Below are positions 8,640 to 54,770 of a stretch of DNA of 64,000 nucleotides, one piece after another; position 1 is the first letter of the stretch; each line of letters starts with the position of its first letter. The notes below the pieces were generated by a model, which made no database searches, was not told the DNA's origin, and worked only from the letters and a program-made list of their open reading frames with translations. Location of the stretch: the NCBI RefSeq assembly GCF_001194135.2, contig NC_068993.1, positions 49,557,504-49,621,503 of the forward strand, in the 5' to 3' direction. Made by a program: the position numbers and the translations under genes. Source of the stretch: Octopus bimaculoides. Its lineage: Eukaryota.

Positions 8640-8890
8640 CATCATCATCATCATCATCATCATCGTTTAACGTCCGCTTTCCATGCTAGCATGGGTTGGA
8701 CGATTTGACTGAGGACTTGTGCAACCGGATGGCTACACCAGGCTCCAATCTAATTTGGCAGAGTTTCTACAGCTGGATGCCCTTCCTAACGCCAACCACT
8801 CAGAGAGTGTAGTGGGTGCTTTTACGTGTCACCCGCACGAAAACAGCCACGCTCGAAATGGTGTCTTTTATGTGCCACCCGCACAAGCCT
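8640..8890 (-). mobile_element. SINE family A with (CAT)n tail
   Basis: Near-perfect reverse complement of 1103-1314, extending further toward the element's 5' end. Confidence 0.92.
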
Positions 8891-8908
8891 TAATAATAAT
8901 AATAATAA

Positions 8909-9128
8909 TTTCTGATTTAGGCACAAGGCCAGCAGTTTTGAGAGGAGAAAGTGTAGTTGATGTTATCTTACCTGCGCTACATGACTAATATTATATTTTC
9001 TTTCAATTGGCTCCAGAAGGATGACAGTTGATCTTGGCAGGGTTTGAACTCAGAATGCAAAGAACTGAAAGAAATACTGCAAATACATTTTGTCTGATGC
9101 TATAATGATTCCATCAAATCATTGTTTT
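8909..9128 (-). mobile_element. SINE family C
   Basis: tttaggcacaaggccagca at the start and gggtttgaactcagaatg (reverse B-box region) inside match the family C copies. Confidence 0.8.
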
Positions 9129-9129
9129 T

Positions 9130-9330
9130 ATATCTGCTTTCCATGCTGGTATGGGTTGGATAGATCATCACAATCTCAGTCAGTTCCTGTTCTGAGTCAC
9201 TACTCTTTTAGATGGCTCTGAAGATCACATTTTGCCTGTCTAGTTCAATTTAGGCTTTATTTCTATGTCTGGATGTTTTACCTGGTGCCTACTTCTTTAC
9301 AGAGTGCCCTGGGTGGATTTATTGTGACAC
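9130..9330 (-). mobile_element. Old, degenerate family A-like copy
   Basis: ctgctttccatgctggtatgggttgga resembles ccgctttccatgctagcatgggttgga; ggatgttttacctggtgcc resembles ggatgcccttcctaacgcc. Confidence 0.55.
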
Positions 9331-9384
9331 TAACACTATGGAGTTGCATGCACGTATGTATATATACATGTATGTGTGAAGGTA

Positions 9385-9658
9385 TGTTTCCTAGTGGTTA
9401 ATGATGATGCACTCACAATTGTGAGATCGTGGTTTCAATTCTCAGACTGGCTGCAGCATTGTGTTCTTGAGCAAGACTCTTCATCTCACATTGTTCCAGT
9501 CTACTCAGCTGTAAATGGGTAACTCTGCTATGGACTAACCTTCCGATCAGGGGAATGCTGGTCTGCTCACCTGGCCAGTGGGGTGGCATCATTCAAAAGC
9601 TAAAACGATGTAAAGGGCATTGTTATCAGCAATGTATAACAATATCTGATAGTCTGGT
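9385..9658 (+). mobile_element. tRNA-derived SINE (family E head)
   Basis: A-box-like CTAGTGGTTA and B-box-like GGTTTCAATTCTC. The core ttgagcaagac...ccagtctactcagctg is shared with the reverse complement of 20520-20590. Confidence 0.75.
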
Positions 9659-9700
9659 TGATACAATGATACAGTGATATATATTTATGTATATATACTT

Positions 9701-9890
9701 TAGGCGTGGGCATGACTGTAGGCGTGGGTATGGCTGTGTGGTTAGGAAGCTTGCTTCCCAGCTACATGGTTTCGAGTTCAGTCCCACCGCATGGCACCTT
9801 GGGCAAGTGTCTTCTGCTATAGCCCCGGGCCGGCCAAAGCTTTGTGGTTGAATTTGGTAGGCGGAAGTTACTGCCGTGTGTGTATATGTC
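9701..9890 (+). mobile_element. SINE family B, 5' tRNA-like head, with an 18-bp tandem duplication at its 5' end
   Basis: TGGCTGTGTGGTTAGG (A-box) and GGTTTCGAGTTCAGTCCC (B-box-like). Reverse-complement homolog at 18815-18983. Confidence 0.85.
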
Positions 9891-9913
9891 TGTGTATGTG
9901 CTTGTGCCTCTCC

Positions 9914-14414: not shown

Positions 14415-15167
14415 TATAATCGATTCTCTTCTTTTGCTAAAATTTTAATTTCCTCAAGAAATATGTCACTCCATCTTTTTCATTCTCACATTCTCTCTAT
14501 TGTCTCAGTTTTTCTCTCACTTTTACTCAACTCCATCTCTTTCTCTCTCTCTCACACACACATACACACACTTTCTCTTTGCTTATCTGTTGGTTTATCT
14601 TTTCTATTCTCTATCTCCTTAACTATCTCTCACATTCACTACATCTCTGTAAGTCTCTAAATGTTGCTCCCACCTACCACTACCATCACTATTCCCAATA
14701 GAAAAGACATTTCTGTCATGATCTTATTCTGTTTGTTTTCTGTTTTTTTCTGGTGCTTGAATATGAATTTGTCTTTTTAATTCCTATACCTAGAGAGCTT
14801 TGTTGTCAAAATTAACCCTTCTTTGATTGAGAAAGCTGCCTTTCTCCAATCGTTGTACACCATAGAAATCGCCACCTTTATCATAGGAACCTACAAAATC
14901 ACAATATAGTTGTCACTAGAACTACCACTGCTACTTAGACATTTCCAGTTTCTTCTCAACGACTCAACCTGCTTTCATGGTTATTGGCCTGATATAAATT
15001 TAAGAGTAACATTTAGCAGTGCCTTCTCTTCTGTCTTTTACTGATATTCCATAAATTCTATTCACAACCTCTCTTTTTCTATCTCTCTTTCACTCACACA
15101 CACACACACACACAAACACTACTGTTTGATTTTAGAAACTCCAGAAAATTTTTAAGCCACTTCAAAG

Positions 15168-15210
<43 letters not shown>

Positions 15211-15689
15211 AAGACAGAAAGACAGTAATCACTGTGATGTGAAGACAAGTATTTTGGTGACATAGATGCTGAGTGGTTGTAGTACTGCTGTTGGTAATAG
15301 GGTGGGTGAGAGTGTAAGGATTATAGCTAGAAGTAGTGCTGTTTTGGCAGGGGTTATAGTATGGTTGCTCATGATACTGTTTGAGAGAGTGTTAGTAATA
15401 GATATTCTTTTATAAGTCTTTTATACCTGCTTTCTTTATTCTGGTTGAAGGACATGTCATAACATCTTCAGAAGGACTTGAACTCACTGTGTAATCTGAT
15501 GAAACTACTGGAAGTCATTAACTTAACCACTTTTTGTTTTCACTCCATTACCTGCCATACAAAAAAGCAACAACTTTCGAAAACCAACCACAAAAATTGC
15601 AACTTAAGCAGCTCAAAAAAACACTTCAACTCTCGCAACCAACACCAACAACAACAATAATAATTACAATAATAATGGCTTTGAAGAAG

Positions 15690-21006: not shown

Positions 21007-21392
21007 GTGGGGGCACAATGGCCCAGTGGTTAGGGCAGGGGATTCGCGGTCATAGGATCGCGGTTTCGATTCCCAGACCGGGCGTTGTGAGTGTTTATTG
21101 AGCGAAAACACCTAAAGCTCCATGAGGCTCCGGCAGGGGATGGTGGCGAACCCTGCTGTACTCTTTCACCAAAACTTTCTCTCACTCTTGCTTCCTGTTT
21201 CGGTTGTGTCTGTAATTCAAAGGGCCAGCCTTGTCACACTGTGTGTCACGCTGAATATCCCCGAGAACTACGTTAAGGGTACACATGTCTGTGGAGTGCT
21301 CAGCCACTTGCACGTTAATTTCATGAGCAGGCTGTTCCGTTGATCGGATAAACTGGAACCATCGACGTCGTAAGCGATGGAGTGCCAACAAC
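21007..21392 (+). mobile_element. Full-length tRNA-derived SINE (family D) with a 13-bp target-site duplication
   Basis: A-box TGGCCCAGTGG (21019-21029), B-box-like GGTTTCGATTCC (21062-21073), (AAC)n tail, and TSD ATTATTTGCTCTA at 20994-21006 and 21393-21405. Confidence 0.95.
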
Positions 21393-37210: not shown

Positions 37211-38293
37211 CAACATAAAATATACATGAAAGTGTTTCGGTACCAAAAACACTACATACAACATAAATGAAAAATGTTGCCCGTCAAACCAAAAAGATCC
37301 TTTAATTTTGTCTATTAGCCACATCATATAAACACACATGCACACACACACTTTCTCACTCTCTCTGTCTCTCTCTTTCTTACGCACACACACACACTCA
37401 CACACATATACAAATGGTAATCTTAGCCTGTTTTTTGCAACTAACTACATAATAGTCAAGGTTCAAATTTCAAAAATATAGTACTTCTAATAATTCATAA
37501 AAAATGAATTTGAAATTCAAGTAAGACTGATGTAAGGAGCCTGGTAAATTGCTACAGTAAAAAGAAAATCCCTATAGACTGAATTAAGGTGTTCACTTAA
37601 TTATAAGAAGGATAAGTTAAGGTCCTTGAGGAGTACAGCAATATAGATGTTGAATTATAGAGGATTTGAAATGATGGCTATCAAAGTTGTGGTAAATATA
37701 GTTTTCTATATTCTTCAATTTATTATTTTTTTTTTCTTTGCCACTACATATTTGATTACATATTTCACAGCAGTTTTAAATTGGCAAAAGATAGCAGTAT
37801 GGAAAGGAGGAAGAAATCTTTGTTTGAACTATGTCAACATGAAGACAGGATCTGAACTTACTTAATGAGGCCAGAGAGAAAAACAAACAAAAAAAAATTA
37901 AAAAAATAAAATCTTTGGTGTGTTGTTATAAATAAGGATTCATTCATGTGAATGAACAAGATCAAGTTAAATTACTGTGTACATGATACTCAGCTGTCCC
38001 GTGGCTTCTTGGGTGCTTATGTTAGTCACTTGGTTTTGATACTACACCATAATGTCAAGCACCACTAATCTGTGTTTCTTACTTTTAAAAGGTACATGAT
38101 TTCCAACATGCACATGTTACACACACACACAAAGTCCAATCCTTGTAAATACAGAAAAATAAAACTTATAATTATGAAGATAATAGTGATATATAGATAT
38201 ATTTATCAATTATATTTGTGTGTGTATGTAAATACGTATGTACACCACCCACACAGACACGTGTGTGTGTGTGTGTAAGTATGTATGTACGTA

Positions 38294-39725
38294 TCCATAC
38301 TATAAAAGGCAGATTTTCTCTGTGTGTGTGTATGTTTGAAATTTTCTTGGATTAAAGAATCGCAATTAATATTCTAAATACAATTTGTTAGGTCACTGCG
38401 TCATTTTTTCACTCAAAAAATTTCCTAATAACGAATATAATCCATAAAACTACACGAGTAAACATTTTCTCCCTAATAAAATCTAATTTCCTCTTTCTAA
38501 TACAAATCCTTTCAACTCCTACTTTCTCTTATGGACCTTTACAAACAATCCAACAACAAATACAAAAAGAAAGGAAGGAGAAACACTGACAGTAAAAGAA
38601 AACTATTTCAGTATCAAATCACATTTCGATACTGTCATGACAGATACTAAAACTACATACAAAATTACTTTGCCCCTCTAAAATTAACTATTTCTATTNN
38701 NNNNNNNNNNNNNNNNNNNNNNNNNNNNNNNNNNNNNNNNNNNNNNNNNNNNNNNNNNNNNNNNNNNNNNNNNNNNNNNNNNNNNNNNNNNNNNNNNNNN
38801 NNNNNNNNNNNNNNNNNNNNNNNNNNNNNNNNNNNNNNNNNNNNNNNNNNNNNGAATGTATTGAATTGATGCAGTCTGTTGCTGTCTTTTTAAACCGGTT
38901 GCTTTCTTGTTTGGAGGCATAATCTATGTACATATTAAAGAGAACAACAAAAGTTATAACAGTTGGCAGGGTCAGTAGTTTTCACATTTCGGTAATTTTT
39001 CAGATTAACACTGGCACGATTTTCACTAGGGTGTTAGGGTTACAGTTTTTGGGTCAGGGTTAGGGTTACGATGAGGGTTAGTGTTATGGTTACGGTTTTA
39101 GAGTCAGGGTTAGGGTTTAAGGATTACGGTTACGTAATCGTGCGGGTGTTAATCTGAAAAATTACCGAAATGTGAAAACTACTGACCCTGCCAACTGTTA
39201 TAACTTTTGTTGTTCTCTTTAATATGTACATAGATTATGCCTCCAAACAAGAAAGCAACCGGTTTAAAAAGACAGCAACAGACTGCATCAATTCAATACA
39301 TTCCAGAAGCTATTTTGAACATAATGCAAAATGGTGCATCAACATGTACTACCCAATCTGATACAATTCTGGCAGAACTGTGTACAACAGATTGCCAGCA
39401 ATTGCTTCATCAGAAATTGCTGTCCTACCTCCTGCGAAAAAGAATTACCCTGCTATGTATAATCAGGGCAGCGCAAAAAGTTGTTTTGCACAAGCATTTG
39501 TATAGCCAATTAGATGAATGAAATTTACATACGCTTAATAATGTTATGCAAAACAGCCTTCAGCCTTTCCCTATTAATTTCATCGTCTTTTGAATTGTGA
39601 ACATATTTACATCATAAGGGTTTTTTCGTTGTAAGGCTTCCTTTTTTAGTTGATTTTCACCTAGCAAGACTTATTGTAGATGGCGTAATAAGTCACACCC
39701 GGACAACGTCGGGTTATACTGCTAG
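38294..39725 (+). mobile_element. Non-autonomous Helitron-like element
   Basis: 5' end A|TCCATACTATAAAAGG followed by (TG)n. The 3' GC-rich hairpin ACCC-G-GAC-AAC-GTC-GGGT (39697-39714) lies 7 nt before CTAG|T (39722-39725). It is inserted between A and T with no TSD. A 155-N gap inside means linkage of the two ends is inferred. Confidence 0.72.
38854..39303. repeat. Long perfect inverted repeat (158-bp arms 38854-39011 and 39146-39303) around degenerate TTAGGG repeats
   Basis: The arms read as exact reverse complements, and the ORF track gives MPPNKKATGLKRQQQTASIQYI on both strands. The inner extension GCACGATT/AATCGTGC flanks a 114-bp spacer (39022-39135) with eight GGG runs, several as TTAGGG/TCAGGG. 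Confidence 0.92.
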
Positions 39726-41960
39726 TTACCTCTATTTGCGATTATATATGTGTGTGTGTGCATCCACTGTAATGGAATTTACGTCAGCAACCTAGTACCA
39801 ATTGTTTCATACAGACTGAGGAGCCATTAATAATTCAACTAGGGAATGCAACTGACACCCTACTATCATGGCTAGTGAGAATATAGGATAAGATGAGTTG
39901 AGATATTAGCAATTTAAGGACAAAATAAGACATGTTGTTGCTAGTTCAATGGAGGCAATCTTTCTTGATAAAGATATTTCTTAGCACTTTTATTTTGATA
40001 TAGTGTGATTAGAATTCTACTGGAATACTAAAATTAACCAATGGGAGTTATAGTTTGAATTATATACTCAAACAGTTATGTGTCTTGCACACTCCTTATC
40101 AAGTGCATTCTCACACATGCTAATTCAGGTGAAATCATACTGATTAGTTGCTTAAACAAGAGCTTTATGTACCAATAATTTGTGAGGATATTGAAGTGTT
40201 ATATGTTGTTGTTGGCTCAGAAAAAGCAAGGGTGAGTGGTTAACCTGATACTGATGGCGCAGAAAGTTAGTGAGTACATATCTACACTGAGTGATAGTTT
40301 AGCTGTACAAATTGATTAGTTCAATATAATATATAGCTATCTGTAGGAAATGCTCAGCTGATCTTAGTACTTCATTCCTATGAGAGTTACCTAAATCAGA
40401 CAAAAATGTATTTTTATTGTACAGAATCAATTGAAAACTTCAATAAAATGGACACTTTTGAAGCAGCTTTCAATAAATGGGCTATCAAAATCTCATAAAC
40501 TGAATTAACACAGCCAGAAATAACAACTATGATGACTGAGATTGTTAGACAACCACCTTACTTCAGTTTTCTGTTGAACACTGATAACAATTTAAAATGT
40601 GTGTGTGTGTTTGTTTGTATGAATATAATAATGGCATATAAGGTGATATATGTATCGATGTAGTTCAGTAAGAATTGAGTTCAATGTATATTCAGTGGCT
40701 ACATTTTTTTTTCCTATTTTTGTTTTTCTCTTTCACTGAATTTATCAGTTTGACAGCTTTTAAGATGCACAAACTTATGAGACATATCTCATTTTTAGTA
40801 GGCTTTTCCACTAACTTAAACCCTGATCTTGTGTTTAGAAAATGCAGGCTGATTTTCACAGACTTTTTGTTATAATATGTGTGTGTGTGTACCTCTTAAG
40901 CCATGAAATATGGTATATATATTAATCAAATCAGGTAGCTATTTCAAGAAAATTTGGCCCAGGGATGTCAAGATCATATCTCAGTTTGGGAATATCATAG
41001 GTTCTAAATGTGATACATAATTCAACTTGTTGCAATTTAATGAGCTGAAAAATAATTTGCCTCATGGTTTCACTAACTGAAATTAATTTGCTATCTACTC
41101 TTGGGAAAAGTAACTTGTTACAAAGTTCCAGCCAAAGGAAGATTCATGGATTTGTTTATCATCTGTTTTATATTATAGAAAGTTTAGCTTAACTCTTCCC
41201 TGTTATTTCCTATAGTTCAGTGTGTACGTGTGTGCGTATGCTGATTATTTCAAGTATGATGTATGTGTACCTGTTTTTACAATTTTTGCTTAGGTTAGTT
41301 GTTTATATGTGTGTAACTTCAGACATTAGTAGTAGTAATAATAATTGTAGAATTTACAATGAGGAACAATTCTTATGCAATGCATAGCTGCATCTTTTTT
41401 TGCTTTCCTGCATGCATAAAGATCTTAACATATGGATATATATAAATATGTGCTTCTCAGAAATGCTATGTGCATATTGCATGAATTAATTGTCATAAGC
41501 TAATGTCTATAAAGTGTAAGTCTTTGAAATGTTCAAAGAGTTTCAGTACTCCCAACACGTGTATCAATTTCAAGTACATTTTTTTGCAAAACTGTTGTAA
41601 TTGTTTGTTGTTGACTTGCTCTGGTTAGTTATGCAATTGACTAATGTTTCATAGACATAGCCATCTTGTTGTCTTGTGTTAAATTTTACAACTTCAAGCA
41701 TATTCTCTCTGTTAAAGTTATTATGTGGTGGCTTGTGGAGTTAGCTTTGGCTGTTACTTGAACAAAAATGAGGGATTATCTATAAGTTGCCATGCTGGCT
41801 TGAACACTGTCAGTTATACCTAAATGTTGTTAGTCTAAAACAATGTACGCATGCATTAGCACATTGCAGTTATCTCAATATATACATATATATATATATA
41901 CACATACATACATGTATCTGTACACACTGGTATTCACTTATGCAATTGTAAACTTAAATA

Positions 41961-43232: not shown

Positions 43233-44745
43233 GCTGCTGGCACAGAAACACAGATATGGGCATGCACATATCTGTGGTGTGGGGATGTATACATAAATGC
43301 AAATCAATGATTATCAATTTGTTACACATTAAGCCATGATGTGTGCTGAAGTGCATCTAGATGCTTTAATAGTCTCAAATGGATCCACCCCGCAACTGCA
43401 AAAAAAAAAAAAAAATCAAAAATTAAATATGACATTGTAAATGCAACTTCAAAGAGGAATTCTTAGGTAGACTTCTTGCCTTGCTACCAATTCTTTCCTT
43501 CATTTCTGTAAATTATGGAGCCAGACCTACCATATGCTAATTACATATGAAAAAAACATCATCCTGAAGCATTAGGCTGGAATTGTTAAATGGTCTTGAA
43601 GATATGTAACACACACACACACACACACACACACATGCACAACGTACTTGAAAATAACAGGCAAATCTCCTTCATTAAACATTCTCCCATATTAAAAAAG
43701 AAATGATACAAACAATGTAGTCATAAATATAGATGTTAATCATGGCTAGAGCATCTTTGAAATAGATGCTAAAGCATCTGTTTGATCAGGACTCGTGGTG
43801 CTAAACTGCAACAACTGATGCAGTAGTAGAACCACTCTTGTCAACCCTGTCATGCAAATTGACATATATGTAGTTAGATGTCTTGACAAGCTGCACTGTA
43901 AATGACTGGTCGAGACATGTAATTTGTGGTCAACATTCAGAAAAGCCTTATTAACATCAGCTGTTGGTGTCTGTATGAGAGAGAGAGAGAGAGAGAGAGA
44001 GAGTGTGTTTATGATTACAAAATGTTAGCTGATAATTAAGAAACTTTGGTAACCACAACATTTATGAGAAAGTGCCATCTTTTACTGTATTTAGCTATGT
44101 AAAGAATTGTAATGTTTAAAAGTGGACAGGATGTTATCCTTCTAGCTGAGAAGTTGTTACTTCATATTGGCACCAAGCTGAGTCTTTGTTAGAAGTAACG
44201 ATATTTCACGAATTTGGAAACAAGCTGAACAAGTTGATAAGGTACAAAGCATGAAATTTTGTCTAAATGACTGAGTATTCCACAATTTTTCATTTGGGTT
44301 GACTCCACTTTTGTAGAAATTAGTGCTACTTATGATTCAAAGATACATGTAACTACTAATGATAGACAAACTGACTGCTTCAGAAAAACTGTTTGAAAAC
44401 AACCACTTGTCCTTCAGTCCAACAACCTTTAAAAATTGTCATATTGTGAGATAGTATTGTAAAGACATTCATGGAGTGGTTGGGCTGTTTCAAAATATTC
44501 TGTGAGTACTGATTCTCTTGTCCACTATATCTCTAACCAGTCCCACTACTAACCAAGTCCTTTGTTGATTATGCTGCTGAGTGAAACCTAAATTCAGGCA
44601 AATCAAACTTAAACACAGAACCATGGGCTCCCATTTATAATGCTTCATTACAGAGCAACATCTCTCTATTTCATGTAATATACTTGTGTGCATACACACA
44701 CACACACGTCTGTGTGTATACATGTTTGTGTGTGTATACATACAA

Positions 44746-44777
<32 letters not shown>

Positions 44778-46690
44778 ATCAGTATTCCTAAAAACTTTCA
44801 TCTTTTATACTTGTTATCTGGTTTAGTAGTTTATTTTCCCCAGTATTCAATTACAGCACCAGGAGAAACAGAATTACTGTAAACATACCCATAACACTTC
44901 ACTGACCAGTTACTCTTGCTTCAATCAGACTGTTGGTTGTTTCCGGTGTCTCTATGCAATCTTTAGATAACTGTGATTGTTTCATGGTCATAAAAGTCTG
45001 CTATAAATGACGATGGCATCATAGCATTGGTGTCCTGGAAAACAATTTCAGATTGTTCTGTTCATTTACACTGTCTCCTCCTCACCACCAACACCACCTC
45101 GACTTCATTTCAATGGATGATTATTCATGGCTGTTAGAATAATCACTGCTTGAATCATTTCCATCCCTTCTCCTTCCTGTGTCCCAAGGGTTAAGTGTAG
45201 CAGGGAGGTGCAGGCACAAAATCCCCACTCTAGGTGAAAGCAGCACCTTTTTCTAATAGGGTCAGATCTCTGCTACAGACTACTATTATAGCTTCAGCAA
45301 GAACAGTCTGAGCGAATTGTAATTAGAATAATGAAATATGTAAATGGAATCAAGTGTAATAATGATAACAGCTATAATTATAATCACAACAATAGCAATT
45401 ACAACAGCAACATTAATATGAAAAATACTAAAAGCAACAACAATAACAAAAGCATTGACAACAAGAACAACAACTACGACAAGAAAAAAAATGTACAAAT
45501 AATGGGTTCTTGTATTGATACAAGACTACAAATTTGTTAGTGCTACGGTGGAGTTGATTTAATTGAAACTGATATATTACTGGTACTTATTTTTATCAAT
45601 ATAAGAGAAATGAAAGGCAGAATCTGTTTGTTAGTATTATTCTCCTACAGGTTACTGTGTGTGTGTGTGTGTGAACATTTGCGTGTGTCTGAGGAAATGC
45701 TAAGATGTTTTAGAGGAATATTGTGTGTGGTGATATTTAGTTTAGCAAATGATCCTTATAAAGGAACCACAGAAGAGGGGACAGCCAATTACAATTAGAA
45801 ATATTGTTTGGAATCCAGTCAGCTGTGATTGAACGGAATTATATACATAGGAGTAGTTCGCAAATTGGACGCTCCTGGTAAGTCAGGCACAATGGTATCT
45901 TATTGTTTGCTTAGCTTCTAAGACATAAGACATGCCATATGTGTGGGCTGATTGTCTTTAAATTGTGGTTCCTTACATTCTAAGAAAATAATAGTAACTT
46001 AACTACAAATTCTGCTGATGCATTCCTGAAACATGGGATGATTTTCTGTTTCATTAAAAAAAAAAAAATCCTTAACTGGGAGAATTTCACTTTGACCCTA
46101 ATAAACCTAATTATTTTAAATGGTTGTTAAGGAGCATATTCAACATCAGATGTTTTAGAGCCTAGCCTGGACAATTTAAATGTTCAAATGTTTGGACGCA
46201 TTTGCCCAAATCACTGATTTTTGGGACCCATTATATGATAAATATATTACACTGTATCGCTTGTACAATACAGCGGCTATATTTGTAATGCAACATGGGT
46301 TTGGATCTTGTGTAAGTAACCTTACTGAAGGCATAAAATCTTTTAGATTAAATTTAATTTTTCTTATCTGGAACATGAAGGCAATAAACTAGTTCCTTTC
46401 ATACTTAGAGAATTCTCCTTTCAAGCTGTCAACCATAATAACAAGTCATGTATACAATTTTAAAAATCAATTTTATTCATTTTCTCTTCCTTTTACTTAT
46501 ATATTTGCAATTGTTGTTGAGATGTTGTTTTATGTTGCGATACTCAGTATATGAGAAATGAAAGAAAGCACAAAAAAAAAAGGAAAGAAACTTAGTGTAT
46601 TTTATTTTTCTAAATGTCTAAAAACAAATTCAAGACATCTTTATATCATCATTAAAAAATATGATTAAAGAACTTTTTAATGTAAATGTG

Positions 46691-53839: not shown

Positions 53840-54770
53840 TGAAGAGATTTAGGAAAAAGTCAGATTAAATTATTTCAGGGAATATGGCTTAGTATAGATA
53901 CTAATCTTATCTCTGTTGATTATCTAGAACAAACCTGAGACTAGATAACAGTAGTTTCAGATAATACCTCAAACTAAATGAGAAATTAGTATACATGTAC
54001 AAGCAATCACATCATTTGCTTAGCATTTTGAGAAACTTAGTCAATGGTGTAAGTAAATCTGCATTTTCAATATCTTCCAATGAAGATACTTATATGAGGG
54101 CAACTGAGTATTATAATGAAGTGCTCAGAAATAGTGGTTTCAATGATAAGCTATATAGAAGCACTGAGAGCGAAAAGCATAGGAACTGGTAAAAGAATAT
54201 TTTATGTTACAACCCTGTATTTAATCTAGCAGTAAGAACTAATATAGCTACGGGGCTCCTTCATTTGATAGATTACTATTTCTTAATGAGACATAGATAT
54301 TGTATGATAGTAGAAAAGACTGTTATGGTTAGTTATGCAAGTTGTAAGAATTTTGATTGTTATATCAGGAATTATAATGCTGCATAGCTAAACGAATCAG
54401 AAAGGCAAGTATCTAACCAACACCAATCATGCAACTGTAGAATTCATGAAATTCATGGAAATTCTTTAGCAAAATCAGTAGCATATAGTTCTAAAGTCAA
54501 AACCAAGTATGTATTGGGGCAGTTGAACTGTCATTACAAAATCAATATTCTAAGCATAACCACTCATTTGTCAGCTAAAAAAAAAATAATAATAAATGGT
54601 ATGGTTTTTATCAAAATTTATCACAAATTCAAAATGATTTGGTCAGTTGTAGATCTTCAAACCAGATATGTGGTGTGATCTTTGTTTGAAAGAGAAAAAC
54701 AGAATGGTTTGAACAAAAGAACTGATTTTGTTAGTACCTTATGTTCATGAAGCTAAACATCTTTTGTGCA
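53840..54770 (+). mobile_element. Decayed Penelope-like element: RT C-terminus, Cys-rich linker and GIY-YIG endonuclease
   Basis: Translations with stops and frameshifts: NLISVDYLEQT (V.FLDVT), VYMYKQSHH (YI...SNHP), SISSNEDTY..ATEYYNEVLRNSGF, NILCYNP...VRTNIA..LL.LIDYYF, TVMVSYASC, CNCR, CIGAVELSLQNQYSKHNHSF (YIG.TE..FK.RY..H..SF), CDLCLKEK, LNKRTDF. Confidence 0.85.

What the first reader, a model, noticed from the sequence alone, without database searches (positions are those of the whole stretch)
38294..39725. Helitron-ended element carrying a giant fold-back with an interstitial telomere-like core
Seen in sequence: A|TC 5' end, hairpin+CTAG|T 3' end, and between them perfect 158-bp inverted arms (about 168 bp with 2 mismatches) enclosing 114 bp of degenerate TTAGGG/TCAGGG repeats. 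Established: these termini define rolling-circle Helitrons, and TTAGGG is the ancestral metazoan telomere repeat. Inference: this is a Helitron family that disperses a cruciform/hairpin cassette with a telomeric-repeat loop, or a fold-back element nested in a Helitron. It could seed interstitial telomeric sites, recruit telomere-binding proteins, or give a long dsRNA if transcribed.
Basis: partly seen in the sequence, partly recalled or inferred. Interest (0 to 1): 0.75.

Follow-up and report, generated by a model that had tools for sequence, protein, structure and literature searches.

The report
Rearranged octopus Helitron with telomere-like repeats
This is a defective copy of a rolling-circle transposon (Helitron) in an octopus-type genome; at least one other copy shares its short telomere-like repeat, while the large mirror-image duplication is found only in this copy and runs into an assembly gap, so it cannot yet be fully trusted.

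Summary

The Helitron call holds. A 94-codon ORF that starts in the right arm led to two Octopus bimaculoides loci (L004, L005) carrying the same family.
- L004 has canonical ends (A|TC...CTAG|T) and decayed RepHel coding with hits down to E=4e-95, many of them Helitron_like_N proteins.
- The window's last 62 nt are 92% identical to L004's 3' end, and similarity stops at CTAG.
- The 5' end at 38294 resembles Helitron 5' ends of relatives. This is suggestive, not proven.

The telomere-like array is shared, collinear, with L005, so at least this subfamily carries it. L004 lacks it.

The fold-back is not a family feature. Neither relative has a left arm. Similarity to L005 starts exactly at the fold-back junction (39015), at an 8-bp microhomology.

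The left arm begins at the first base after the gap, so its true length, its link to the 5' part and its reality remain unproven. I put it at about 65-70% real.

This is an ordinary transposon copy with a private rearrangement, of low to moderate interest.

The parts
38294..38338 (+). Putative Helitron 5' terminus (left terminal sequence): A|TCCATACTATAAAAGGCAGATTTTCTCTG...
   Evidence: It ranks first of 1831 A|TC sites in the window for anchored similarity to the 5' termini of L004 and L005. A 36-nt match (86%) covers window 38288-38322 and L009 8687-8722, which lies at an A|TC 1.3 kb upstream of an O. sinensis RepHel gene on the same strand. Caveat: (TA)n(TG)n microsatellites in control loci reach similar scores.
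38339..38698 (+). A-rich sequence between the putative 5' terminus and the gap. It has no detectable relative. Whether it belongs to the element is unproven.
   Evidence: No blastn hit in L004-L009 or elsewhere in the window. No significant similarity to the 5' region of L004/L005.
38699..38853 (.). Assembly gap (155 N, estimated length). Continuity across it is unknown.
   Evidence: The inverted repeat does not resume on its left side.
38854..39014 (-). Left arm: an inverted duplicate of 39143-39303 (the family 5'UTR plus the first 22 codons). It is private to this copy and is cut by, or ends at, the contig edge.
   Evidence: It is absent from L004 and L005. It is the only non-low-complexity inverted copy among 64 gap edges tested.
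39015..39021 (+). CACGATT: the fold-back junction microhomology and the first bases shared with L005. With G39014 it pairs with AATCGTGC at 39136-39143.
   Evidence: Similarity to L005 starts at 39015. L005 has ...GGTAAATATAC|CACGATTTTCACTAGGG.
39022..39135 (+). Degenerate telomere-like minisatellite (TTAGGG, TCAGGG, TTACGG, TTATGG and others), made of two ~50-nt higher-order units, G-rich strand on +.
   Evidence: It is collinear with the array in L005, including the shared variant run GGGTTAGTGTTATGGTTACGGTTTTAG. L005's array scores 17 hexamers per 109 nt. L004 has no array.
39136..39303 (+). Right arm: the family sequence upstream of and including the ORF start (ATG at 39237).
   Evidence: 81-86% identical to L004 12648-12802 and to the matching part of L005.
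39237..39505 (+). Decayed start of the family ORF. It has an 18-nt deletion after codon 3 and a frameshift near 39386.
   Evidence: HMMER hits P0002 (73% identity) and P0003 (71%), both O. bimaculoides predicted proteins. tblastn splits P0002 across two frames, at 39234-39386 and 39386-39502. The deletion is seen in the alignment.
39506..39663 (+). Tail specific to the non-autonomous subfamily. It is shared with L005 as far as 39633, where L005 enters a gap, and is not shared with L004.
   Evidence: Window 39304-39633 is 93% identical to L005 46796-47126. L004 continues into RepHel coding instead.
39664..39725 (+). Helitron 3' terminal sequence, with hairpin 39697-39714 and CTAG 39722-39725, followed by host T 39726.
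   Evidence: 92% identical to L004 14085-14148. Similarity ends at CTAG, and all three 3' ends are followed by T. Anchored score 38/40, next best in the window 9. One compensatory A-T to G-C change in the stem in L005's upstream copy.

Best explanation
The right-hand contig (38854-39725) ends in a non-autonomous, decayed copy of a canonical Helitron family of Octopus bimaculoides or a close relative.

In this family the order is: 5' terminus (TC...), a ~280-nt 5' region, in one subfamily a degenerate TTAGGG-like minisatellite about 100 nt upstream of the start codon, the RepHel ORF, and a 3' hairpin plus CTAG. The window copy keeps the minisatellite, the 5'UTR, about 90 decayed codons, a subfamily-specific tail and the 3' terminus.

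The minisatellite is inherited with the element (shown for one other copy). The subfamily therefore spreads short telomere-like tracts, probably as a passenger.

The giant fold-back is a rearrangement private to this copy. At least 161 nt lying just right of the minisatellite were copied in reverse orientation to its left side. The join is at an 8-bp inverted microhomology (GCACGATT / AATCGTGC) that brackets the array.

Inferred mechanism: fold-back priming or template switching, either at a fork or break stalled at the G-rich array or in the single-stranded rolling-circle intermediate.

The sequence left of the gap starts with what looks like a genuine Helitron 5' terminus of a related subfamily. 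The simplest reading is one chimeric 1.43-kb element (38294-39725). The gap leaves this unproven, along with the true arm length.
For: Family and organism:
- An exhaustive HMMER search with the ORF found only two real relatives. Both are O. bimaculoides predicted proteins.
- Their loci L004 and L005 share the loop, the right arm, the ORF start and the tail at 78-93% identity, and the 3' end at 92%.

Helitron identity:
- L004 has A|TCTATATATATAAAG... and ...CTAG|T.
- L004's internal reading frames hit 329 proteins, down to E=4e-95, many with PF14214 Helitron_like_N.

3' terminus: similarity stops at CTAG, and it is the only such site in the window.

5' terminus: rank 1 of 1831, plus the match to L009.

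Array is family-borne: the alignment is collinear and shares variant units.

Fold-back is private:
- Neither L004 nor L005 has a left arm.
- The breakpoint at 39014/39015 coincides with the microhomology.

Fold-back is not a systematic artefact:
- Only 1 of 64 gap edges shows it, whereas direct duplicates across gaps are common.
- The two inner junctions differ by 2 bases and the 114-nt loop is asymmetric.
Against: - The left arm starts exactly at the contig edge, and its outer 158 nt are 100% identical to the right arm. A contig that turned back on itself would look the same.
- No reads or independent assembly could be consulted.
- Only two relatives were available, so 'private to this copy' rests on n=2.
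- The 360 nt after the putative 5' terminus match nothing.
- The 5'-terminus score can be approached by (TA)n(TG)n microsatellites, and the site sits in such a tract.
- L004 lacks the array, so the array belongs to a subfamily rather than the whole family.
Confidence: 0.65

Rival explanations
1. Assembly artefact. The left arm does not exist in the genome. The contig, or a gap-closing walk that extended leftwards through the hard-to-assemble telomere-like array, turned back onto its own reverse complement. The real sequence left of the array is something else, for example the L005-type 5' region.
For: - Complementarity runs to the very first base after the gap, and the outer 158 nt are perfect.
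- The array breaks contigs elsewhere in this assembly: L005 gap 43721-46330 starts inside the array.
- The assembly has many unmerged contig-end duplicates.
Against: - The loop is 114 nt and asymmetric, not a zero-loop palindrome.
- The two inner junctions differ by two bases, so each needs its own read support.
- The only pre-existing inverted repeat is 8 bp, too short to confuse a k-mer graph.
- Fold-backs at gap edges are not recurrent, 1 of 64.
- A contig break exactly at the outer end of a real inverted repeat is also what a graph assembler produces.
Confidence: 0.28
2. One reading: the inverted repeat plus telomeric loop is a cassette that this Helitron family disperses in many copies.
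For: - The array and the right arm are family sequence.
- Both termini look genuine.
Against: - Two of two relatives lack the left arm.
- Similarity to L005 begins exactly at the fold-back junction.
- The 100% arm identity, against 7-20% divergence between copies, points to a recent local event.
Confidence: 0.06
3. Two unrelated pieces. The 5' terminus at 38294 belongs to a different Helitron (or is chance), and the right contig is a 5'-truncated, rearranged fragment. The scaffold merely juxtaposes them across the gap.
For: - There is no similarity between 38339-38698 and any family copy.
- The gap is unresolved.
- Microsatellite contexts give near-equal 5' scores.
- Head-to-tail and adjacent Helitrons occur in this genome (L005 43392-43398).
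Against: - The best 5'-terminus-like site of the whole window lies 1.43 kb upstream of, and on the same strand as, the only 3' terminus.
- The L009 match is independent of that test.
- No other terminus lies between them.
Confidence: 0.3
4. A fold-back or MITE-type element (terminal inverted repeats with a microsatellite core) nested inside a Helitron.
For: The 450-nt unit has long inverted arms and a repetitive core.
Against: - The arms are the Helitron's own 5'UTR and ORF start.
- The core is at the same place in L005 without any left arm.
- The outer arm end at 39303 is not a boundary in the family alignment.
- No second copy exists.
Confidence: 0.02

Closest known systems
Canonical animal Helitrons (Helitron1 / HLE1) and their non-autonomous deletion derivatives
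   Same: - 5' TC after A, 3' hairpin plus CTAG before T, and no terminal inverted repeats.
- Relatives encode RepHel.
- Copies share termini but differ internally.
- Helitrons are already reported in octopus genomes (PMC13282606).
   Different: - This copy has an internal telomere-like minisatellite and a private 161-168-nt inverted duplication.
- Its 5' and 3' halves resemble different subfamilies.
Helitrons and Helentrons that carry internal tandem repeats or sit in telomeric repeats. Examples: Drosophila DINE-TR1 and oyster Helentron-borne satellites (from my own knowledge); Paramecium Helitrons with internal satellites, inserted in C4A2 repeats (PMC13085455); subtelomeric Helitrons in Hydractinia (PMC11934779).
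   Same: A rolling-circle element with an internal minisatellite whose length varies between copies, and an association of Helitrons with telomere-type sequence.
   Different: - Here the telomere-like units are inside the element, upstream of the ORF, and degenerate.
- The copies are interstitial.
- In Paramecium the telomeric repeats are the flanking target.
Mu killer of maize: an inverted duplication of the 5' part of MuDR that makes a hairpin RNA and silences the family (from my own knowledge)
   Same: An inverted duplication covering the 5'UTR and the start of the transposase ORF of a DNA transposon.
   Different: There is no evidence here of transcription or small RNAs. It is a different transposon class, the arms are much shorter (168 nt) and the locus is unverified.
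Fold-back inversions and spaced inverted duplications formed by microhomology-mediated fold-back priming or template switching (from my own knowledge)
   Same: A short pre-existing inverted microhomology at the junction, an asymmetric spacer, and near-identical arms.
   Different: This is at the kilobase scale inside a transposon. The outer end is hidden in a gap and the mechanism is inferred only.
Short interstitial telomeric sequences (ITS)
   Same: A short internal tract of TTAGGG-type hexamers.
   Different: - It is strongly degenerate: 3 perfect units out of about 18.
- It has a higher-order ~50-nt duplication.
- It is carried inside a mobile element rather than left by chromosome fusion or break repair.

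Membership tests
Helitron (canonical) | 3' end CTRR followed by a host T, with copy-to-copy similarity stopping there | tested here: met
   CTAG at 39722-39725 plus T. The alignment with L004 and with L005's upstream copy diverges right after CTAGT. Anchored score 38/40 against 9 for the next site. No hit for the right flank.
Helitron (canonical) | Short G+C-rich hairpin about 10 nt upstream of CTRR | tested here: met
   Hairpin at 39697-39714, 7 nt before CTAG. It is weak on its own (-4.1 kcal/mol, z = +0.34). It is conserved in three copies, with one compensatory A-T to G-C change and 89% of cells paired. With n=3 this is anecdotal.
Helitron (canonical) | 5' end TC after a host A, with a terminal sequence shared with relatives | tested here: met
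   A|TC at 38293/38294. Rank 1 of 1831 sites against the L004/L005 termini. 36-nt match to L009 8687-8722, upstream of a RepHel gene. Caveat: microsatellites reach similar scores.
Helitron (canonical) | Both termini belong to one contiguous element | not testable with these tools
   The gap 38699-38853 lies between them. No copy shares the window's 5' part.
Helitron (canonical) | Insertion between A and T without a target-site duplication, shown by an empty site | not testable with these tools
   No searchable octopus genome DNA collection was available. The flanks match nothing in the loci held.
Helitron (canonical) | Autonomous relatives encode a Rep/helicase protein | tested here: met
   L004's joined frames gave 329 hits down to E=4e-95, many with PF14214 or named Helitron helicase-like. 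The window copy keeps only about 90 decayed codons. The same pseudo-protein gave no Pfam hit itself, because the stretch lies N-terminal to the Pfam domain.
   L004 and L005 have the right-arm sequence once, and other sequence to the left of the array position.
   L005 46474-46610 is collinear and shares variant units. The array is absent from L004 and from the other Helitron loci L006-L009.
Fold-back / MITE-type transposon | The inverted arms are the element's own termini, flanked by target-site duplications, in multiple copies | tested here: not met
   The arms are the Helitron 5'UTR and ORF start. The outer arm end is not a family boundary. The repeat is single-copy in the window. The left flank is hidden by the gap.
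Contig-edge fold-back artefact | Arm complementarity runs to the contig edge with 100% identity | tested here: met
   The left arm begins at 38854, the first base after the gap. The outer 158 nt are perfect.
Contig-edge fold-back artefact | Exact mirror junction with no loop or a sub-k-mer loop, recurring at other gap edges | tested here: not met
   The loop is 114 nt and asymmetric. There are two mismatches at the junction and only 8 bp of microhomology. Only 1 of 64 gap edges shows an inverted copy.
Contig-edge fold-back artefact | No read support for the left junction | not testable with these tools
   No reads were available.
Interstitial telomeric sequence | Tandem TTAGGG-type hexamers at an internal site | tested here: met
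   3 perfect and 11 one-mismatch hexamers in 114 nt, with a maximum of 4 anywhere else in the window. TRF gives period 6. That TTAGGG is the octopus telomere repeat comes from general knowledge and was not tested here.

The most novel reading that the evidence does not exclude
The inverted duplication is real and is transcribed. Because its arms are the 5'UTR and start codon region of the Helitron's own ORF, the 168-bp hairpin would act like maize Mu killer. It would be a natural hairpin-RNA locus producing small RNAs, or a heavily A-to-I-edited dsRNA in an animal known for ADAR editing, that silences this Helitron family in trans. The G-rich telomere-like array would be the fragile pivot that created it.
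Probability: 0.07. Interest if true: 0.6.

Novelty: new member of a known kind. Interest (0 to 1): 0.3.

Why it matters
For genome annotation:
- Two RefSeq "uncharacterized proteins" of O. bimaculoides (LOC128248710 and LOC128248902) are Helitron remnants.
- An octopus Helitron subfamily carries a short telomere-like tract. Some interstitial TTAGGG-like sites in cephalopod genomes may therefore be transposon cargo rather than traces of chromosome fusions or telomerase repair.

The fold-back, if real, is one example of a microhomology-mediated inverted duplication pivoting on a G-rich repeat inside a rolling-circle element. It would also be a possible hairpin-RNA source against its own family. 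None of this changes current views of Helitrons. Its main value is as a caution: a striking structure that abuts an assembly gap should be checked against reads before it is interpreted.

Tried and rejected
- In-window copies: blastn of the 5' part, arm, loop, 3' part and flanks found none.
- Rfam on the whole window: no hit. ORF listings showed no clear genes.
- Exact-protein look-ups for five window ORFs: none on record.
- Word-indexed protein search with the 94-aa ORF: nothing. Only the exhaustive HMMER search found the relatives.
- Arm 22- and 24-mers in viral and metagenome collections: 0 hits.
- The 3' hairpin+CTAG pattern: 0 viral hits and 3 metagenome contigs. These turned out to be one plant locus sharing only the 17-mer and CTAG. 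I rejected it as chance or a generic Helitron-type end.
- Pfam on P0002, P0003 and the L004 pseudo-protein: no hit, because that stretch lies N-terminal to PF14214.
- P0001 (E=8e-26) and P0004: rejected. P0001 is 13 weak repeats summed. P0004 is mucin-like, low-complexity sequence.
- Continuation of the inverted repeat left of the gap: none.
- Overall similarity of 38294-38698 to the L004/L005 5' region: not significant.
- A 29-nt direct repeat bracketing the region (38200-38228 and 39733-39760): judged a microsatellite coincidence, not a target-site duplication.
- Other octopus Helitron loci (L006-L009): no telomere-like arrays and no fold-backs.
- Literature searches for Helitrons with internal telomeric repeats: only looser associations.
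Full report
OBSERVATION

The inverted repeat:
- The repeat finder reports arms 38854-39021 and 39136-39303, 168 nt, 99% complementary, 114 nt apart.
- The outer 158 nt are perfect. The two mismatches are adjacent (39012-13 against 39144-45). The innermost 8 bp (GCACGATT / AATCGTGC) pair again.
- The 450 nt fold as single-stranded DNA at -199 kcal/mol, z = -35.

The core:
- It holds 14 hexamers within one mismatch of TTAGGG, all on the + strand, 3 of them perfect.
- The rest of the window never exceeds 4 per 109 nt.
- Tandem Repeats Finder gives period 6, and the core is two ~50-nt higher-order units.

The termini A|TC (38293/38294) and hairpin plus CTAG|T (39697-39726) are there. Taken alone they carry little information:
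- ATC occurs 1843 times in the window.
- A hairpin+CTRR+T motif occurs twice against 0.67 expected.
- The hairpin folds no better than shuffles.

THE GAP

- The left arm begins at the first base after the N-run 38699-38853.
- The repeat does not resume in the left contig.
- Nothing in the region has a second copy in the window.
- So the arm is either cut by the contig edge or ends at it. Continuity with 38294-38698 cannot be shown from the window.

FINDING RELATIVES

The window is AT-rich, full of microsatellites, and has no Rfam hit and no clear genes. It carries SINE copies that I recognise from memory as octopus-type.

Most routes to related sequence failed:
- DNA scans of the viral and metagenome collections with arm sequence found nothing.
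- The 3' hairpin pattern hit only one plant locus, which shares just the 17-mer and CTAG.
- A 94-codon ORF (39237-39521) starts inside the right arm. The word-indexed search found nothing for it.

The exhaustive HMMER search did find two real relatives, P0002 (73% identity) and P0003 (71%).
- Both are "uncharacterized proteins" of Octopus bimaculoides.
- P0002 continues in a second frame of the window (39386-39502, 87%), so the window copy is frameshifted.
- It also lacks 18 nt after codon 3.
- Their loci were fetched from GCA_001194135.2 as L004 and L005.

IT IS A HELITRON

L004 carries the family between A|TCTATATATATAAAGCTGAAG (11470) and ...GGTTATACTGCTAG|T (14148).
- Its internal frames, joined across frameshifts, hit 329 proteins down to E=4e-95.
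- Many of those carry PF14214 Helitron_like_N or are named Helitron helicase-like, from octopus, cuttlefish, rotifers and spiders.

The 3' end:
- The window's last 62 nt (39664-39725) are 92% identical to L004's 3' end.
- In a three-way alignment the sequences diverge immediately after CTAGT.
- Scored against the 3' termini of L004 and L005 only, 39725 gets 38/40. The next CTRR|T site in the window gets 9.
- The hairpin is conserved, with one compensatory A-T to G-C change. With three sequences this is anecdotal.
- The 3' end is therefore a verified family terminus.

THE 5' END

- The 405 nt left of the gap have no overall similarity to the 5' region of L004/L005.
- Of 1831 A|TC sites on both strands of the window, 38294 ranks first for anchored similarity of its first 45 nt to the family 5' termini.
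- Independently, window 38288-38322 matches L009 8687-8722 (86% over 36 nt): gtA|TCTCTTATTATAAAAGGCAGATTTTATCTG. That site lies 1.3 kb upstream of, and on the same strand as, a RepHel gene of O. sinensis. That gene's element ends in a related hairpin plus CTAG|T at 15547.
- Control loci show that (TA)n(TG)n microsatellites can reach similar anchored scores, and the site sits in such a tract.
- I rate the 5' terminus as probable, about 0.7-0.75. I rate its belonging to the same element as the 3' end at about 0.65.

THE TELOMERE-LIKE ARRAY TRAVELS WITH THE ELEMENT

- L005 has, in the same place, ...GGTAAATATAC|CACGATTTTCACTAGGG, then about 130 nt of TTAGGG-like units, then GGTGTTAATCTG..., the 5'UTR and the ATG.
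- The two arrays are collinear and share idiosyncratic units (GGGTTAGTGTTATGGTTACGGTTTTAG).
- Window and L005 are 93% identical in the tail 39304-39633. They are paralogous copies of one non-autonomous subfamily.
- L004 lacks the array: 55 nt of other sequence sit at that position. Four other octopus Helitron loci have none either.
- So the array is a subfamily trait, about 100 nt upstream of the start codon.
- I cannot tell whether it was captured, added by telomerase at a break, or grew in place from TTACGG/TTATG-like seeds still visible in L004.

THE FOLD-BACK IS PRIVATE

- Neither relative has an inverted left arm.
- Similarity between the window and L005 begins exactly at 39015 (CACGATT), which is the fold-back junction.
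- That heptamer, with G39014, is complementary to AATCGTGC on the other side of the array. The join therefore uses an 8-bp inverted microhomology that brackets the G-rich array, with two unmatched bases next to it.
- The arms are the Helitron's own 5'UTR and first 22 codons, so this is not a nested fold-back element.
- The arms are 100% identical over 158 nt while family copies differ by 7-20%. That means a recent local duplication, not two insertions.
- The outer arm end (39303) is not a boundary in the family alignment.

REAL OR ARTEFACT

For an artefact:
- Complementarity runs to the contig's first base.
- The outer arms are perfect.
- This array breaks contigs elsewhere in the assembly (L005 gap 43721-46330).
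- The assembly has many unmerged contig-end duplicates.

For a real structure:
- The loop is 114 nt and asymmetric.
- The two inner junctions differ by two bases, so each needs its own reads.
- 8 bp of inverted repeat cannot mislead a k-mer graph.
- Only 1 of 64 gap edges in the window and three loci of that assembly shows an inverted copy.
- A graph assembler breaks contigs exactly at the outer end of a true inverted repeat.

I put it at about 0.65-0.7 real. Only reads or PCR can settle it.

MECHANISM (inferred)

A non-autonomous Helitron is mobilised in trans by RepHel-coding relatives and carries a degenerate telomere-like minisatellite as cargo. In this copy, replication or repair stalled at the G-rich array, or the single-stranded rolling-circle intermediate folded. 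A fold-back or template switch then occurred at the 8-bp microhomology and copied at least 161 nt of the neighbouring segment in reverse.

COMPARISON WITH WHAT IS KNOWN, AND VERDICT

- Helitrons are already annotated in octopus (PMC13282606).
- Helitrons with internal satellites, and Helitrons associated with telomeric repeats, are described in Paramecium. Subtelomeric Helitrons are described in Hydractinia.
- In the searches I could run, I found no report of telomere-like units inside a Helitron.
The dispersed fold-back cassette is not.
- This is a new member of a known kind, with a copy-specific and unverified rearrangement. Interest 0.3.

Noticed in passing
window 34176 (+ strand): A|TCTATAATAAGAAACATGAAATTCTGTCTG is the second-best of 1831 A|TC sites for likeness to the family 5' terminus (score 15 against 16). 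It may be another Helitron 5' end. No matching 3' terminus is in the window.
   Followed up: partly
window ~8650-9900: This is the G+C-richest stretch of the window (about 41%). It holds several tRNA-like SINE copies of a type I recognise from memory as abundant in octopus genomes. This fits the O. bimaculoides origin of the relatives.
   Followed up: no
window 38200-38228 and 39733-39760: A 29-nt imperfect direct repeat (TATTT..ATTATATWTGTGTGTGT) brackets the finding. The 17-mer core occurs only at these two places in the window. It is probably a (TA)n(TG)n microsatellite coincidence rather than a target-site duplication.
   Followed up: partly
L005 43392-43398: The CTAG of one Helitron copy is followed directly by the TC of the next (CTAG|TCTAATATAAT). 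This is a head-to-tail junction of two Helitron copies from different subfamilies.
   Followed up: partly
L005 gaps 21204-21382, 38907-38916, 43721-46330, 54009-54018: Contig ends on either side of these gaps are exact direct duplicates of each other (164 nt of 100% identity at the third gap by blastn). This points to unmerged overlaps and doubtful gap sizes in the O. bimaculoides assembly. The third gap starts inside the telomere-like array.
   Followed up: partly
L004 10001-13227 and L005 10001-46998: The RefSeq genes LOC128248710 and LOC128248902 ('uncharacterized protein', P0003 and P0002) are built on the decayed start of a Helitron ORF and are probably not host genes.
   Followed up: partly
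L004 11701-12517: The 5' region of the L004 Helitron copy is interrupted by about 817 nt that are rich in CT and CA microsatellites and absent from L005.
   Followed up: no
L001-L003 (metagenome contigs Ga0315915_1000359, Ga0228710_1015308, Ga0315914_1000678): Plant-like DNA (a PsbP-domain-like ORF at L003 5328-6059) carries the same 17-nt hairpin CCCGGACAACGTCGGGT, then 7 nt and CTAG|T. It is either chance, with roughly one hit expected for 21 fixed bases in a collection of that size, or a plant Helitron end with a convergent hairpin.
   Followed up: partly
L009 8694-15547 and L006 ~14607-14854: O. sinensis carries a ~6.9-kb Helitron with RepHel genes, a 5' end TCTCTTATTATAAAAGGCAG and a 3' end CCCCGAGCAACGCCGGGCAATTCTGCTAG|T. 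A 95%-identical 3' region is in L006. Both lie in (TA)n tracts.
   Followed up: partly
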